63,055 nucleotides of DNA from contig PDIP01000009.1 in the NCBI GenBank assembly GCA_002811645.1, positions 134,150 through 197,204 on the forward strand. The letters are read 5' to 3'. The stretch is from Corallochytrium limacisporum Hawaii. Lineage: Eukaryota; Protista; Pluriformea. Both the position numbers and the translations under genes were made by a program. Below, piece after piece: positions 742 to 6,253 of the stretch. A model generated the notes under the pieces. The model ran no database searches, was not told the DNA's origin, and saw only the letters and a list, made by a program, of their open reading frames with translations. Numbering within the stretch: position 1 is the first letter of the stretch; every line of letters begins with the position of its first letter.

Positions 742-1173
742 ATGGCTGACATTGTCAACGGTGGAAATCTCGGTGCAGTTGAGGCTGCATACGATGGTAA
801 TGTCGACCAAGAATGTGAGGAAGAGCATGAGCCTCGTGTGAGTAAGGAAATGTTTGAGGAAGCTACGGATCTTCGCCGCTTGGCTGATGATGAAGCCGAA
901 GACATGGAAGTGGAAACGTACACGGAGGGTTGGTGGGGCAATGTTGAATGGCTGGGGTACCGCATCCTGAAGAGCATAGACTACGTAGGAGAGTCCATTG
1001 CAGACTTTTTTGGCATCACAGACTCAAAGTACGCAGACGTCATCGAAGAACATGACGAGATTATGGCAGAAGAGGCAAAGGAGTGGGCAGAGGCTGCAGC
1101 TTATGCAACCCGGGAGATGGCTAAACTGGAAGATGCCATGCCACAGCCTCTTCCGCAGGCAATGAAAGGATAG
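742..1173 (+). CDS. FAM177A1: FAM177-family small acidic protein
   Basis: 143-aa ORF with ATG in AAAATGG context. The segment DYVGESIADFFGITDSKYADVIEEH resembles the conserved FAM177 core (DFLGEKIAS.LGI.TPKYQYAIDEY). Confidence 0.7.
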   Translation: MADIVNGGNLGAVEAAYDGNVDQECEEEHEPRVSKEMFEEATDLRRLADDEAEDMEVETYTEGWWGNVEWLGYRILKSIDYVGESIADFFGITDSKYADVIEEHDEIMAEEAKEWAEAAAYATREMAKLEDAMPQPLPQAMKG

Positions 1174-1293: not shown

Positions 1294-2352
1294 TCATTTG
1301 GCCGGTTCTACAGCCCCACAGTTCTTACACGTTCGCAATTCTTCCGTACCATAGTAGCGCTTTATGACTGGTGCAAGCTGTGAGCCGAGATCAGTGCAGT
1401 GGAACCTCTCTTCGTACATGATATCGCGGCAATTGGGACAGTACCAACGAAGGCCGTCCAATTCTGACTCCTCACGTTCCCTCTCAATCACCAAGCCAAT
1501 GGTATGAGGGAAACGCTGAGGGCTATGAGGCACCAGTCCTGGAAGAAGAAAAGTGTTGCCTTCCTCGATAATAACATCCCGGAACTCACCACCATCCACG
1601 ACTTTCAGGCACATCTTTCCTTGAAGCTGCAAGAACCATTCTTCACCCTCATCGATGTGGTAGTCTGTCCGAGTGTTTGGTCCACCCACGACCATTACCT
1701 TCAGCTGGCATCCCTTACCATACACCATCTTGTTGCCAACCGGCGGCTTCAACTGATCTCTAATACTGTCAATGTGGTTCCGCAAGTGGAAGGGGTCCGG
1801 ATGAGTCTCCATGTTCACTTTGGGTGACTTACCTCCATCCTGAATCTCCTGACCTTGCGTTGCTGGCCCTTGGAGCAGAGCACCCTCACAGCCCTGGCAA
1901 GTTTTGGTACCACTGCCATGTGTTGATACGTCTTCCTCTGTTTTCAGTTCTGTAATCATCAAGCACTTCCCGCAGACAGCCCAGTGCAACTCTGAATCCG
2001 ATACCTTCTGGCGCAGAGACATGACCTCACCAGCGGTTGAGTCAAGGATACGAGGGACATTGCCTGGCACAAGATAACAGTAACCTTCTTCCAATGTCAC
2101 ACTTCGGGACTTGCTCCCATCGATGATGTGCACCTTCACAGTTCCACTCAGACCCCAAAGCCAGATTTCATTGGTATCGACTGTGTACGACGAATTCCTA
2201 CTGCTGGGCTGCACCTCCACCTGAAATTGACATCGTTTTGTGAAAAGATTGGTTCCGTGACCTGACCTCTCAATCTCTTTCACTGCAGACCAGAACGGGT
2301 ATGCCGCCGGCCTGTGGACTTTTGGATCAATGTACGGCAACGAGGAAGTCAT
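1294..2352 (-). CDS. HAAO: 3-hydroxyanthranilate 3,4-dioxygenase with an N-terminal degenerate duplicate domain
   Basis: The C-terminal half has LKPPVGNK, VGGPNTRTDYH, EEWFLQ, LLPGLVPHSPQR, LRWYCPNC, FHCTDLGSQL and RTCKNCG. Fe ligands H232/E238/H276 are intact. The N-terminal half is a diverged copy. Confidence 0.95.
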   Translation of the reverse strand: MTSSLPYIDPKVHRPAAYPFWSAVKEIERSGHGTNLFTKRCQFQVEVQPSSRNSSYTVDTNEIWLWGLSGTVKVHIIDGSKSRSVTLEEGYCYLVPGNVPRILDSTAGEVMSLRQKVSDSELHWAVCGKCLMITELKTEEDVSTHGSGTKTCQGCEGALLQGPATQGQEIQDGGKSPKVNMETHPDPFHLRNHIDSIRDQLKPPVGNKMVYGKGCQLKVMVVGGPNTRTDYHIDEGEEWFLQLQGKMCLKVVDGGEFRDVIIEEGNTFLLPGLVPHSPQRFPHTIGLVIEREREESELDGLRWYCPNCRDIMYEERFHCTDLGSQLAPVIKRYYGTEELRTCKNCGAVEPAK

Positions 2353-3060
2353 ATCTATTGTTATTGCGAAACAGGTTATCTAAATCTAGCGCAAGAAGCT
2401 CAGGGCATATCTCTGATGCTCACTAATATGCACCTTCACATCCTAGATCATCGCTGTTGCATGAATTCCAACTGAACACCCTACACAGTGGCACATCCTT
2501 TTGTGCGTCTGATTTTGGCATCGCTCACCCAGCTGCTGCGTGGCGATGGACAGGGGATGGAGCACGGAGTTTACGCACGCTAAATTGGCCATGAATTCCT
2601 GCCCCACAATTTACCCCGCGAAGCATTTCATTTCTGAAATTTGGCTCAGCCGCCACCCCAAACCCAAAGAGGAGCACGCATCGGGCAATAGAAAAAAGTA
2701 CTCAGAGTTAGGTGGCTAACATTCACCAAGGGATATTTACATATACGGACGCCGACCAAAAAACCGGCGGATTGGGTTCCAAGGCAGCAGTTGTAAGAAT
2801 CGATGGGGCGCTGACCGTGTCAACAAGAGCGACAAGAAGACGTTGTCGAGCCTGACAGAGAACAACATCGACACGATTGGGCATAGTACTTCTCAGAAAC
2901 ACAGTCCGAGTCATGTCGTTGGTTTGCCATTCCTTCCCAAAGCCCTATTGCCCATATGTGCCGTCAACTAAGAACTCAGTATTACATTTGTATTAATTCA
3001 TGTCAATCTTATATTATCCGTGCTGAATTACGTTCAAATAAGTTATATGTGACCCCTCAT

Positions 3061-3279
3061 TTAGTTAGGGTTGTCCTCAGCAGCCTCCTTTTCGAGCATC
3101 TTAATGCGAGATCCAACAATCGGCATATGCTGCATGATAATGTTGGGCTGAAGTGCCAAGAAACCAATGGTACCTACTGTAGCACCCCAAGCCATTAAAG
3201 AAGGTACCCAGTTGATCACACGCTCCTTGGTAAAACCCAAGAGATGAAGGCTTCCTGAAGGGGGGGTCGGCCGCACCAT
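3061..3279 (-). CDS. QCR10: Cytochrome bc1 complex subunit 10 (QCR10/UQCR11-like), 72 aa
   Basis: From the ATG at 3279: ...NWVPSLMAWGATVGTIGFLAL...HMPIVG. This matches the W.P....WG single-TM pattern plus the P..G motif of QCR10/UQCR11. Confidence 0.7.
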   Translation of the reverse strand: MVRPTPPSGSLHLLGFTKERVINWVPSLMAWGATVGTIGFLALQPNIIMQHMPIVGSRIKMLEKEAAEDNPN

Positions 3280-4057
3280 TCTTGTTCTATTTGCTTTACT
3301 ACGAATTTTCCCAGAGATAACTGTACGTGTAAGATTTGTACAGTAATCATGATAATTTTGTATGCGTACAAAAGCTTTAATAGCAAGATAGATCCTAAGA
3401 CTGGAAGGCACTTTTTATTGGAATGCAATATTGCAACAAGTTTAGTGTCACAAACGCCGACGGAAGACACTGGGGTATGGGACTCATTCCAGCAGGAAGT
3501 ATTTCCTTGCGGACCACGCATCACATTCGCCCTCTCAACTTCTGCTGCTGTGTAGAAGACAGCCTCCCGTTTGGAGCCCACGGTGTGAATCTATCGGCCC
3601 GTGGCCACCGCGCGGAGCGGGGAAAGGGGCTGAAAACAATGGGATTTGTTTATCTCGCCCTGATGTCATATATTGGCTATGGAAGACTGGCAGGGTAGGG
3701 GTTTCTGATACAGAACATAAGGTGCGGTGTCTCAGGGACACAGCAAAGTAAAAAAGTGCGACTCACTGCTCCAGTCGTGGGGGTTGAATTCTATATACGG
3801 ACCTTGCTCAGTCGACAATGAAATTGCCTAAGCACCGTGCGGGTCACCCATCTGGAGCACAAGGAACGGGTCAAGCTGTCGTTGTTCGTGTATAGCTATT
3901 CCAAGGAGAGAGGCATGGTAGATCGATGGGACAGTGCCTTGAACACAGTTCACTGATATGAGCAATTAGCACAAGACATGTAGGGTAGCAAAGATACAAG
4001 ATTGTTAACTCATGTGAGCGTAGACGTCGCACAGACACTTTTCGACAAGCCTTCTGA

Positions 4058-6253
4058 ATGCTCTCATATGGACGGAGCTCCATCGGGAGACTCCGCACTG
4101 GAAACCGAGTAGTACCTTCACAACTGTTTCAAAAATATTTGTCGCAGTTCGTGAACGAACCTGAACGACTGACACGCGATACGTACGATGTCGTTGTTGT
4201 CGGGGGCGGACATGCTGGCTGCGAGGCCGCGGCAGCGAGTGCAAGAATGGGAGCCAAGACACTGCTCATTACCCACAAATTCTCGAAGATTGGAGAGCTG
4301 AGTTGTAATCCATCCTTTGGTGGTATTGGTAAGGGCCATTTGATTAAAGAAATCGACGCACTGGGAGGAATTTGTGGGAAACTTTGCGATGAAGCAGGTA
4401 TCCATTTTCGCACGCTGAACGCTTCAAAAGGACCAGCTGTACAGGGGCCTCGGGCACAGATTGACCGTGATCTATATCGCCAGGGCATGCAGGCTATGCT
4501 CTATGATCAGTACAGAGGTCATTACGGCCTTGAGATTCTGGAGGCAAGCGTTGAGGACCTCTTGGTGGACCACAACGCTGATTCCGAGTATCTCAAACCG
4601 GTGTGTCACGGAGTGGTCGTGGAAACTAGTCGTGGCCCGCAGAACTTGCCTGTCAGAAGTTCCATAGAGAGCAAGACAACAATAATAACGACCGGTACCT
4701 TTCTTCGAGGAGAAATTCACGTCGGTATGACTGTGACACCTGCAGGCAGGCGTGACGACAAGCCTGCCGTGGGACTAGGCCAGACGCTGGAGGAGCTAAA
4801 AATCCCGATGGGCAGGTTGAAGACTGGCACACCCCCCCGCATCAAGCGTGAGAGTGTGAATTGGGACCATCCATCGCTTACTGTTCAGCCAGGAGATGAG
4901 AATCCGACACCTTTCTCTTACAGCAACCAGTTGGTGACGCGCTGGCGACGGGAGGACCAGATCGAATGCCATATGACTCGCACAAACAAGGAGACTGAGC
5001 AACTGATTCACGAGTCAATGGATCGCAACATCCATGTCATTAGGCAAGATGTGTATGGTCCTCGATACTGCCCTTCAATTGAATCTAAGGCCTTGAAATT
5101 CCCCAATCGATCGCATCAGGTCTGGTTGGAACCGGAAGGTCTGGACAGTAACATTATCTACCCCAACGGCATCAGCATGACGATGCCACCGGAAGATCAG
5201 CTTCGGGTGGTGCAAAGTATCGCAGGATTAGAGGAAGCAGAGCTTGTATTCCCGGGATACGGTGTTGAGTACGACTACTGCGACCCCCGGGATCTCCAGA
5301 GGACGCTAGAGAGTAGGCGAATCAACGGTCTCTACCTTGCTGGACAGATCAACGGCACCACAGGATATGAGGAGGCTGCTTCACAAGGCCTGTTCGCGGG
5401 TGCCAATGCAGCTTTGCAGAGCCAAAACTATCCCCCAGAGCTGCGCTTGGAGATTAAGCGCAGCGACGGCTACATTGGAGTACTCATTGATGACCTCCTT
5501 CGGCATAGCGATGACCGGCGGGAACCGTACCGCATGTTCACATCGCGGGCGGAGTACCGACTGTCTCTCAGAGCGGACAATGCAGATGTCCGCCTTACAC
5601 GCCGCGGTCATCAATTCCCCGGCCTTGTCTCCGATGAGGCACATAGGCGAGTACTGTACATCGTGGACGCCCTGGAACGTGGCCGTCATATGTTGCAGTC
5701 TGCTAAATTGTCTCCTATAGCCTGGTCACGCTGTACTGGTGTTACGGAGGGAGGTCCATCGCTGCTCAATCCGGACCCAATCAGTGCCTGGAAACTACTG
5801 AGCTTTAAGAGTATTTCCCTGCAGCAGATCATTGATTCTGCGCCAGCAGAGATGGGTCTGGATGCTGTGGACTATGCTTTGGTTGGAGAGCGCCTGGAAA
5901 TCGAGGGCAGATATAGCGATCTCTTGCGCCGACAGGAAGGGCAGATCCGCGAATTTGCTCGCAGTGAGAGCCTACGACTGCCCACGGACATTGACTTTGA
6001 AAATCTCACATTCCTCGACAAGGAAGAACGTGAGCTGCTCAAGAAGCATCGTCCGGCTACCATCGGGTTTGCACAGAGACTCTATGGTATGTCAGCGGCT
6101 AGCGTCTTGCGACTTATGAAGTATGCAAAGGGACGCGGAGGCAATCAACGGGGTGTCCAACAGCACAGTCGCCTGCGGCAGCGTCATCAGAAACACGAAC
6201 ACCACAAGGACGATACCCCAGCCTCTGTGTCAGCGGCCAGTGGAGCGGACTGA
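4058..6253 (+). CDS. MTO1: Mitochondrial tRNA U34 modification protein MTO1 (GidA/MnmG family)
   Basis: [21 protein letters not shown]-binding motif, [62 protein letters not shown], and an Arg-rich N-terminal presequence. Confidence 0.97.

What the first reader, a model, noticed from the sequence alone, without database searches (positions are those of the whole stretch)
1294..2352. Fused tandem-duplicate HAAO: dead cupin first, two rubredoxin-type Cys4 sites, reversed relative to animal HAAO
Seen in sequence: residues 1-155 align along their length with the catalytic residues 181-347 (KRCQFQVEV/KGCQLKVMV; SYTVDTNEIWLWGLSG/DYHIDEGEEWFLQLQG; IIDG...EEG.CYLVPGNVPR/VVDG...EEG.TFLLPGLVPH; DSEL..CGKC/ESEL...CPNC; KTCQGC/RTCKNC). 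The N-terminal copy has lost all three catalytic Fe ligands (H to T57, E to I63, H to R101) but keeps all four rubredoxin-like cysteines (C127, C130, C152, C155). Established knowledge: bacterial and yeast HAO are homodimeric monocupins with a second Fe(Cys)4 site, while vertebrate HAAO is a monomeric bicupin with the catalytic domain first, a degenerate C-terminal cupin and no Cys4 site. The EIWLWGLSG segment recalls the vertebrate C-terminal DVWLWQLEG. Inference: this is either an independent single-chain mimic of the dimer or a permuted relative of the animal bicupin, carrying an extra metal-storage site. I do not know this architecture as described.
Basis: partly seen in the sequence, partly recalled or inferred. 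Interest (0 to 1): 0.8.

Follow-up and report, generated by a model that had tools for sequence, protein, structure and literature searches.

The report
Tandem HAO enzyme, first half dead
This gene of a single-celled relative of animals encodes its only enzyme for one step of making NAD from tryptophan. The enzyme is built as two copies in one chain, of which the first has lost its active site but kept a four-cysteine metal site. That is the mirror image of the animal enzyme, and relatives show that either half of an old doubled gene can die.

Summary
ORF 1294-2352(-) encodes 352 aa made of two 3-hydroxyanthranilate 3,4-dioxygenase (HAO) units.

- **C-half:** a full HAO. It passes the Pfam and NCBIfam cut-offs and keeps all six catalytic or substrate residues and the Cys4 site.
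- **N-half:** 33% identical to the C-half (E 6e-13). It folds as an HAO cupin, has lost every Fe ligand and keeps all four cysteines.
- **Whole model:** it superposes on bovine HAAO (Z 24.5) with live and dead domains swapped.
- **Expression and copy number:** an RNA-like contig spans exactly the whole ORF, and this is the genome's only HAO.

The interpretation needs changing, because the architecture is not unique.

- About 16 uncultured eukaryotes and Pigoraptor chileana carry HAO-HAO with both halves intact.
- Chromosphaera perkinsii and two environmental proteins are also dead-first.
- Capsaspora, Spongospora and animals are dead-second.

The best reading is an old tandem gene with lineage-specific decay of either half, not a permutation. 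Trees cannot prove this. Every dead half that still has its tail keeps 4/4 cysteines, which suggests the Cys4 site is selected independently of catalysis.

I found no paper describing tandem or dead-first HAO. I rate it a new variant of a known kind, of moderate interest.

The parts
1294..2352 (-). Complete intronless ORF, 352 aa plus stop: tandem HAO, dead N-half and live C-half
   Evidence: The identical protein is in EukProt.
1999..2352 (-). Residues 1-118: degenerate HAO cupin barrel. Fe ligands are replaced (T57, I63, R101), and R99 and E110 are both replaced by S.
   Evidence: pLDDT is 78-95 in the full model. The N-half model's top 22 PDB matches are all HAO.
1873..1998 (-). Residues 119-160: shortened rubredoxin-like tail of the dead half, with C127, C130, C152, C155. 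There are 21 residues between the CxxC pairs, against 33 in the live half.
   Evidence: All four Cys fall in columns that are invariant across 26 domains. 4/4 Cys are kept, against 16/55 other conserved positions. pLDDT is only 60-78.
1795..1872 (-). Residues 161-186: low-confidence linker. It ends in the VNMETHPDPF motif that opens an HAO unit and contains Met181.
   Evidence: pLDDT is 54-73, and below 50 at residues 171-173.
1459..1794 (-). Residues 187-298: catalytic HAO cupin with R228, H232, E238, H276, R280, E290
   Evidence: It superposes on bacterial HAO at Z 21.6, rmsd 1.3 A, 40% identity.
1297..1458 (-). Residues 299-352: canonical rubredoxin-like tail of the live half, with C305, C308, C342, C345
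1250..2398 (-). Extent of one RNA-like contig (run X1) that covers the whole ORF plus 44 and 46 nt of flank
   Evidence: table 8. Neighbouring genes lie on separate contigs of different depth.

Best explanation
The gene encodes the organism's only 3-hydroxyanthranilate 3,4-dioxygenase, which acts in the kynurenine route from tryptophan to quinolinate and NAD+.

The protein is a single-chain pseudo-dimer. The C-terminal unit is a complete catalytic HAO, with the 2-His-1-Glu Fe(II) site, the two substrate arginines, the catalytic glutamate and its own Fe(Cys)4 site. The N-terminal unit is an HAO copy that can no longer bind catalytic iron or substrate. It takes the place of the second subunit of the bacterial or yeast homodimer, as the C-terminal domain does in animal HAAO. 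It still presents a CxxC...CxxC metal site.

It most likely descends from an old HAO-HAO tandem gene whose two halves were both active. That state survives in Pigoraptor chileana and many uncultured eukaryotes. One active site was later lost independently in different lineages: the first here, in Chromosphaera perkinsii and in some environmental eukaryotes, and the second in Capsaspora, Spongospora and animals.

Status of each step:
- Shown: the sequence anatomy, the relatives, the predicted fold and arrangement, the single locus, and an RNA-like contig over the whole ORF.
- Inferred: the scaffold role, metal binding by the N-half cysteines, and the single ancient duplication.

My sub-confidences are about 0.9 for the architecture and the HAO role, and about 0.55-0.6 for origin by differential decay.
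For: - **C-half is a bona fide HAO.** It passes Pfam 3-HAO (E 4e-66), TIGR03037 (225 bits against a cut-off of 146) and PRK13264 (241 against 220). It is about 60% identical to the bovine and human catalytic domain. All six functional residues and the Cys4 site are present.
- **N-half is a diverged copy.** It is homologous to the C-half at E 6e-13, and all functional residues but one ambiguous Arg are replaced.
- **Structure.** The full AF2 model has pLDDT 87.4 and pTM 0.86. It superposes on bovine HAAO at Z 24.5 and rmsd 2.5 A over 249 residues, model 15-295 on chain 2-281. The top 22 Foldseek hits of the N-half alone are all HAO, at E 1e-9 to 1.5e-6; the next cupins are at 3e-5 or worse.
- **Genome context.** There is one HAO locus in the 24-Mb assembly. 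TDO, kynureninase and QPRT are each found at one locus.
- **Expression.** Contig 1250-2398 of run X1 spans the ORF, while neighbouring genes lie on other contigs of different depth.
- **Strain comparison.** A second strain shows four differences in the ORF, all synonymous, one of them in the Cys130 codon.
- **Relatives with both halves intact:** P0002-P0015, P0017 and P0018. Opistho-2 is Pigoraptor chileana.
- **Dead-first relatives:** Nk52, which is Chromosphaera perkinsii, plus P0025 and P0026.
- **Dead-second relatives:** Capsaspora P0028, Spongospora P0039 and animals.
- **Age of the duplication.** d1-d2 identity within intact tandems is 53-66%, the same as between proteins. In one clade d1 and d2 form separate supported groups.
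- **Cys4 retention.** The site is kept 4/4 in all five tail-bearing dead domains, although only 29-45% of other conserved columns are kept.
Against: - The domain trees are unresolved. All dead domains are long branches that collect at the base.
- The AU test does not reject the N-half and C-half of this protein being sisters, that is a private duplication (p 0.158).
- Intact d1 and d2 do not separate across all tandems, so several independent duplications remain possible.
- The Pigoraptor transcriptome came from a culture fed on a bodonid, so the live-live protein could in principle belong to the prey.
- Contigs cannot exclude an extra transcript or translation start at Met181, which sits exactly where a stand-alone HAO would begin.
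- Metal binding by the N-half cysteines is not shown. That segment has pLDDT 60-78 and a 12-residue deletion.
- The organism name comes from earlier unchecked notes of this scan.
Confidence: 0.7

Rival explanations
1. Private duplication: a monocupin HAO gene duplicated in tandem and fused within the Corallochytrium lineage itself. Its upstream copy then decayed. On this view the other tandem and bicupin HAOs arose by separate duplications.
For: - The AU test does not reject the N-half and C-half as sisters (p 0.158).
- Intact d1 and d2 do not form two global clades.
- Bicupin HAO also occurs outside Holozoa (Spongospora P0039), so duplication may be recurrent.
Against: - Every named holozoan in the hit list has a two-unit HAO: Pigoraptor, Capsaspora, Chromosphaera and animals. 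One early duplication therefore needs fewer events.
- The halves are only 33-35% identical, while live halves of other tandems stay at 53-66%. This shows old or fast divergence, not a recent event.
Confidence: 0.2
2. Permuted animal-type bicupin: the ancestor already had a live-dead HAAO, and the domain order was swapped here, for example by duplication of the two-domain gene and loss of the outer parts. On this view the dead N-half is orthologous to the animal or filasterean dead C-domain.
For: - The N-half scores higher against a profile of dead second domains (50-52 bits) than against the live profile (32-36 bits).
- There is a faint WLW-motif match to the bovine C-domain.
- The live C-half groups weakly with the live first units of Capsaspora and Pigoraptor.
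Against: - The same excess holds for every dead domain against any dead-domain profile. It includes first-position, tail-bearing dead domains (N-half 52.6 bits against that profile), so it reflects permissive profiles and convergent replacements.
- The shared states, E57 to I/V/T and E110 to S, are scattered over dead first and dead second domains of unrelated lineages.
- The N-half keeps the whole Cys4 tail, which all animal and filasterean-type dead domains lack.
- Live-live tandems exist.
Confidence: 0.05
3. The N-half is not part of the working protein. Translation or transcription starts at Met181 and gives a normal monocupin HAO, and the upstream 180 codons are a decaying leader.
For: - Met181 lies in VNMETHPDPF, exactly where stand-alone HAOs begin.
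- Contigs cannot show transcript starts.
Against: - 180 codons stay open, which has a chance of about 2e-4 at 3 stops per 64 codons (my arithmetic).
- Met1 is the first ATG after in-frame stops and lies inside the RNA-like contig.
- The N-half folds confidently as a cupin packed on the C-half, with pTM 0.86.
- It keeps 4/4 metal cysteines while only 29% of other conserved positions survive.
- The one strain difference in it is synonymous.
Confidence: 0.05

Closest known systems
Animal HAAO (bovine 3fe5, human 2qnk/5tk5): monomeric bicupin
   Same: - It has two HAO-derived cupins in one chain, with one active site.
- The predicted arrangement superposes at Z 24.5 and rmsd 2.5 A over 249 residues.
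- Its live domain is about 60% identical to the live half here.
   Different: - The polarity is reversed. In animals the first domain is catalytic and the second is dead; here the first is dead.
- The animal dead domain has no Cys tail, and the animal live domain has mostly lost the Cys4 site. Here both halves keep it.
Bacterial and yeast monocupin HAO (Cupriavidus 1yfu, yeast 1zvf). From my own knowledge these are homodimers with a rubredoxin-like Fe(Cys)4 site, which Liu et al. 2015 (J Biol Chem 290:15621) proposed as an iron reservoir. That paper is cited in PMC10143591; I could not read it.
   Same: - The C-half matches over its full length: Z 21.6, rmsd 1.3 A, 40% identity.
- It has the same ligands and the same Cys4 site.
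   Different: Here the partner subunit is covalently fused, catalytically dead and trimmed. It lacks the LxPPVGNK loop and 12 residues between the two CxxC pairs.
Live-live HAO-HAO tandems: Pigoraptor chileana 'Opistho-2' (P0003) and about 16 proteins of uncultured eukaryotes (P0002-P0015, P0017, P0018)
   Same: - The two-unit layout and linker are the same, and there is a Cys4 tail on both units.
- They are 43-45% identical over 85-90% of the query.
- P0002 and P0013 lie among eukaryotic genes.
   Different: Both of their units keep all catalytic residues. I found no paper describing them.
Chromosphaera perkinsii Nk52_evm1s2038 (P0019), with environmental P0025 and P0026
   Same: They are dead-first and live-second, and both units keep the Cys4 site.
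   Different: - Their first units are less decayed. Nk52 keeps E57, H95 and R99; P0025 and P0026 keep H51 and E57.
- Their first units are not detectably closer to this N-half than live domains are (26-30% identity).

Membership tests
3-hydroxyanthranilate 3,4-dioxygenase (Pfam PF06052 / TIGR03037): C-half, residues 181-352 | Profile score over the curated cut-offs | tested here: met
   The half alone scores: Pfam 202.6 bits (cut-off 25), TIGR03037 200.7 (cut-off 146) and PRK13264 216, just under its 220 cut-off. The whole protein scores 241 on PRK13264.
3-hydroxyanthranilate 3,4-dioxygenase: C-half | 2-His-1-Glu Fe(II) ligands (H51, E57, H95 in Cupriavidus numbering) plus R47, R99 and E110 | tested here: met
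   H232, E238, H276, R228, R280 and E290 align to these columns.
3-hydroxyanthranilate 3,4-dioxygenase: C-half | Enzymatic activity: ring cleavage of 3-hydroxyanthranilate | not testable with these tools
   Inferred from sequence, from its being the only HAO locus, and from the presence of TDO, kynureninase and QPRT.
3-hydroxyanthranilate 3,4-dioxygenase: N-half, residues 1-180 | Profile score over the curated cut-offs | tested here: not met
   Pfam 22.8 bits against a cut-off of 25. NCBIfam 28-29 bits against cut-offs of 146 and 220. Homology itself is clear: E 6e-13 to the C-half.
3-hydroxyanthranilate 3,4-dioxygenase: N-half | Fe(II) ligands and substrate-binding residues | tested here: not met
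   T57, I63 and R101 stand at the ligand positions, and S at both R99 and E110. This is a pseudo-enzyme domain, not an HAO.
3-hydroxyanthranilate 3,4-dioxygenase: N-half | HAO-type cupin fold with C-terminal tail | tested here: met
   The AF2 model has pLDDT 77. Its top 22 PDB matches are all HAO, with TM 0.56-0.71 over 137-177 columns. Caveat: the input alignment consisted of HAO domains.
Rubredoxin-like Fe(Cys)4 site of HAO | Four Cys as CxxC...CxxC in the family's columns | tested here: met
   C127/C130/C152/C155 and C305/C308/C342/C345 all fall in columns invariant across 26 domains.
Rubredoxin-like Fe(Cys)4 site of HAO | The site actually binds a metal, with tetrahedral geometry | not testable with these tools
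   No model coordinates were available to me. The N-half tail has pLDDT 60-78 and a shortened spacer.
Animal-type bicupin HAAO | Catalytic domain first, degenerate tail-less domain second | tested here: not met
   The order is reversed and the dead domain keeps its tail. It works like a bicupin HAAO but is not of the animal type.

The most novel reading that the evidence does not exclude
The Cys4 centre of HAO has a function that does not need the catalytic site of its own domain, such as iron supply to the neighbouring active site or fold and redox stabilisation. Dead HAO halves would then be kept partly as carriers of that centre. Four independent lineages have killed one half, and each kept all four cysteines in it. 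This protein, with two Cys4 sites and one active site in a single chain, would be a natural separation-of-function construct for testing the 'iron reservoir' idea.
Probability: 0.3. Interest if true: 0.6.

Novelty: new variant of a known kind. Interest (0 to 1): 0.45.

Why it matters
Animal HAAO makes the precursor of quinolinate and of NAD+, and it is a two-domain enzyme whose second domain has no assigned function.

This locus and its relatives suggest where that domain came from. Live-live, dead-live and live-dead forms exist side by side among unicellular relatives of animals. Either half of a doubled enzyme can become the silent partner, which makes this a clean natural example of reciprocal pseudo-enzyme formation.

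The strict retention of the four-cysteine site in dead halves gives a direct handle on the debated role of the second iron site of HAO.

Tried and rejected
- **Domain trees.** I built trees of 76, 93 and 52 rows. The backbone is unresolved and the dead domains collect by long-branch attraction, so they give no usable placement of the N-half.
- **AU test of N-half plus C-half as sisters.** It was not rejected (p 0.158) and so is not decisive. I ran no further AU tests, because each took about 5 minutes and was likely to be equally indecisive.
- **Dead-profile score as evidence for permutation.** The higher score of the N-half against dead-second-domain profiles looked like support. A control showed that every dead domain prefers any dead-domain profile, and the shared states are scattered, so I rejected it.
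- **Word search with the dead first unit of Nk52.** It found only itself.
- **ESM Atlas feature search.** It returned only large bacterial monocupin clusters.
- **Literature.** Ten searches found no description of tandem or dead-first HAO. The 2014 survey of eukaryotic NAD synthesis (PMC4217691) does not mention HAO domain structure. Liu et al. 2015 (PMC4505474) is not held. A search for TSA prefix GILK, the source of P0016, found nothing.
- **Window scans.** tRNA and Rfam scans of the window were empty.
- **Not run.** I did not run the exhaustive representative search, because the claim does not rest on absence of relatives.

Full report
**What is there**

Window 1294-2352 (minus strand) is one uninterrupted ORF of 352 codons. 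Its ATG is the first in frame after stops 10 and 12 codons upstream. The identical protein is already a predicted protein in EukProt.

Earlier notes of this scan name the genome as Corallochytrium limacisporum, a unicellular relative of animals. I did not verify the name. The best matches of the live half are consistent with it: Capsaspora at 66% identity, and Pigoraptor. The neighbours are ordinary eukaryotic genes unrelated to this pathway:
- a FAM177-family gene at 742-1173(+);
- a small QCR10/UQCR11-like ORF at 3064-3276(-);
- MTO1/GidA at 4058-6253(+).

**Checking the observation**

Residues 181-352 are a textbook 3-hydroxyanthranilate 3,4-dioxygenase (HAO).
- For this half alone, Pfam 3-HAO gives E 3e-60 and TIGR03037 gives 200.7 bits against a cut-off of 146.
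- The half is about 60% identical to the catalytic domain of bovine and human HAAO.
- R228, H232, E238, H276, R280, E290 and C305/C308/C342/C345 all fall in the functional columns.

Residues 1-180 are a diverged copy.
- BLASTP against the C-half gives 33% identity over 101 residues, E 6e-13.
- Pfam scores 22.8 bits, just under the cut-off.
- The Fe ligands are T57, I63 and R101, and both R99 and E110 are replaced by S.
- The four cysteines C127, C130, C152 and C155 sit in the four rubredoxin-site columns, which are invariant across 26 aligned domains.
- The copy is trimmed. It lacks the LxPPVGNK loop and 12 residues between the two CxxC pairs.

**Fold and arrangement**

With a 27-sequence alignment, AlphaFold2 gives pLDDT 87.4 and pTM 0.86. 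The N-terminal barrel is confident (78-95), its Cys tail is less so (60-78), and the linker is poor.

The whole model superposes on bovine HAAO (3fe5) at Z 24.5 and rmsd 2.5 A over 249 residues. Model residues 15-295 lie on chain residues 2-281 at 15% identity. In other words the dead first cupin lies on the animal live cupin, and the live second cupin on the animal dead one. The C-half alone matches bacterial HAO at Z 21.6, rmsd 1.3 A.

The N-half folded alone has pLDDT 77. Its 22 best PDB matches are all HAO structures, at E 1e-9 to 1.5e-6 and TM 0.56-0.71. Other cupins start at E 3e-5. The alignment given to the predictor consisted of HAO domains, so this is consistency, not independent proof.

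**Is it one gene product?**

Run X1 behaves like an RNA assembly.
- Its contigs coincide with gene units (722-1241, 1250-2398, 2805-3321, 3960 onward).
- The contigs have very different depths, with holes between them.
- One contig spans exactly the ORF plus 44 and 46 nt.

Run X2, a different strain, differs at four positions in the ORF. All four are synonymous, and one lies in the Cys130 codon.

Contigs cannot exclude an additional start at Met181, which lies where stand-alone HAOs begin. Several points argue that the N-half is translated and under selection:
- the 180 open codons, with a chance of about 2e-4;
- the confident fold;
- 4/4 cysteines kept, against 16/55 other conserved positions.

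**Context in the genome**

A six-frame search finds only this HAO locus in the 24-Mb assembly. It finds tryptophan 2,3-dioxygenase, kynureninase and quinolinate phosphoribosyltransferase at one locus each. The gene is therefore the sole HAO of an apparently working kynurenine-to-NAD route.

**Relatives change the interpretation**

The word search returned 1234 HAO-like proteins. Splitting the best 120 into domains and reading the functional columns shows a full series.
- **Both units intact, each with Cys4:** P0002-P0015, P0017 and P0018. These are mostly from metagenomes. P0002 and P0013 lie among eukaryotic genes such as HSP70, an exosome subunit, Yip1 and kinases. P0003 is from 'Opistho-2', which is Pigoraptor chileana, a filasterean.
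- **First unit decayed, second live, both with Cys4:** this protein; Nk52_evm1s2038 of Chromosphaera perkinsii, an ichthyosporean; and P0025 and P0026.
- **First unit decayed and without a Cys tail, second live:** P0016, which is decayed only in part (H51 to Q, tail lost).
- **First unit live, second dead:** P0020, whose dead unit keeps Cys4. Capsaspora P0028, P0021-P0023, P0027, P0029 and P0030, Spongospora P0039 and animals have lost the tail of the dead unit. Most animals have also lost the Cys4 site of the live unit.

Hence the arrangement is not unique, and 'dead-first' has arisen or persisted in several lineages.

**Origin**

Intact units are 53-66% identical, both within a protein and between proteins. 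The duplications are therefore about as old as the lineages compared.

In one clade (P0006-P0014, P0017, P0011) first and second units form separate supported groups. Elsewhere the backbone is unresolved, and all dead domains are long branches that gather at the base. The AU test does not reject the N-half and C-half of this protein being sisters (p 0.158).

Parsimony over named taxa favours one early live-live tandem followed by independent loss of either active site. Every named holozoan has a two-unit HAO, and one filasterean is live-live while another is live-dead. This is an inference, not a demonstration.

The permutation idea gained apparent support when the N-half scored 50 bits against a dead-second-domain profile and 32 bits against the live profile. 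A control on the cupin core removed that support. Every dead domain, whatever its position, scores better against any dead-domain profile. This N-half scores 52.0 bits against the filasterean-type dead profile and 52.6 against the first-position, tail-bearing dead profile. The shared replacements (E57 to I/V/T, E110 to S, N to S) are scattered over unrelated dead domains. The presence of the full Cys tail in this N-half, absent from all animal-type dead domains, also argues against permutation.

**How it probably works**

The C-half catalyses the reaction. The N-half replaces the second subunit of the ancestral homodimer, which is inferred from the superposition on the animal bicupin. It probably also binds a second Fe or Zn through its four cysteines.

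All five tail-bearing dead domains, from four lineages, keep 4/4 cysteines while keeping only 29-45% of other family-conserved positions. The rough chance is 0.007 for this protein and about 2e-7 across the four lineages if they are independent. This suggests the site is selected for its own sake.

From my own knowledge, the rubredoxin-like iron of bacterial HAO has been proposed to refill the catalytic site (Liu et al. 2015, cited in PMC10143591). I could not read that paper. A 2:1 ratio of such sites to active sites here would fit that idea but is untested.

**Novelty and score**

The bicupin principle is known from animals, and tandem HAO proteins sit unremarked in databases. In ten searches of the held literature I found no description of live-live HAO tandems, of a dead-first HAO, or of Cys4 retention in dead halves. 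That includes the main survey of eukaryotic NAD synthesis.

I class it as a new variant of a known kind, with interest 0.45. It is a tidy evolutionary series and a useful natural construct, not a new mechanism.

No part of the window was treated as human-like, and the gene has no introns, so no spliced model was needed.

Noticed in passing
window 3064-3276 (-), within X1 contig 2805-3321: A short transcript has the highest contig depth in the first 6 kb of the window apart from a contig that only touches bases 1-70 (157.7). It encodes a 71-aa single-pass protein resembling complex III subunit QCR10/UQCR11. Pfam UCR_6-4kD gives 22.7 bits and QCR10 gives 20.7 bits, both below their cut-offs.
   Followed up: partly
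window 742-1173 (+): A 143-aa acidic protein matches the FAM177 family (E 2.9e-12). The family has no known function. The gene lies tail to tail with the HAO gene, and their contigs end 9 nt apart (1241 and 1250).
   Followed up: partly
window 4123-4133, in the MTO1/GidA gene 4058-6253 (+): The second strain (run X2) lacks 1 + 8 = 9 nt near codon 22-25 of MTO1. This is an in-frame loss of three codons in the presumed N-terminal presequence.
   Followed up: no
proteins P0056, P0076, P0100, P0117: Some HAOs of about 320 aa carry an N-terminal RidA/YjgF (PF01042) domain. The one that carries a name is gammaproteobacterial. This is a different fusion, joining HAO to an enamine/imine deaminase fold.
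   Followed up: no
P0039, Spongospora subterranea: A plasmodiophorid (Rhizaria) has a live-dead two-cupin HAO. Bicupin HAO is therefore not confined to animals and their relatives.
   Followed up: no
L003 6001-7491 (P0013), and P0014, P0024: In these gene calls the first HAO unit is interrupted by about 35-50 residues that match nothing. This is probably an unspliced intron in the automatic gene call.
   Followed up: no
P0034, P0036, P0040, P0043, P0047: The closest relatives of the live halves of the dead-first proteins P0025 and P0026 are 'monocupins' with unexplained N-terminal extensions of about 60-130 residues. These may be further-decayed or truncated first units.
   Followed up: no
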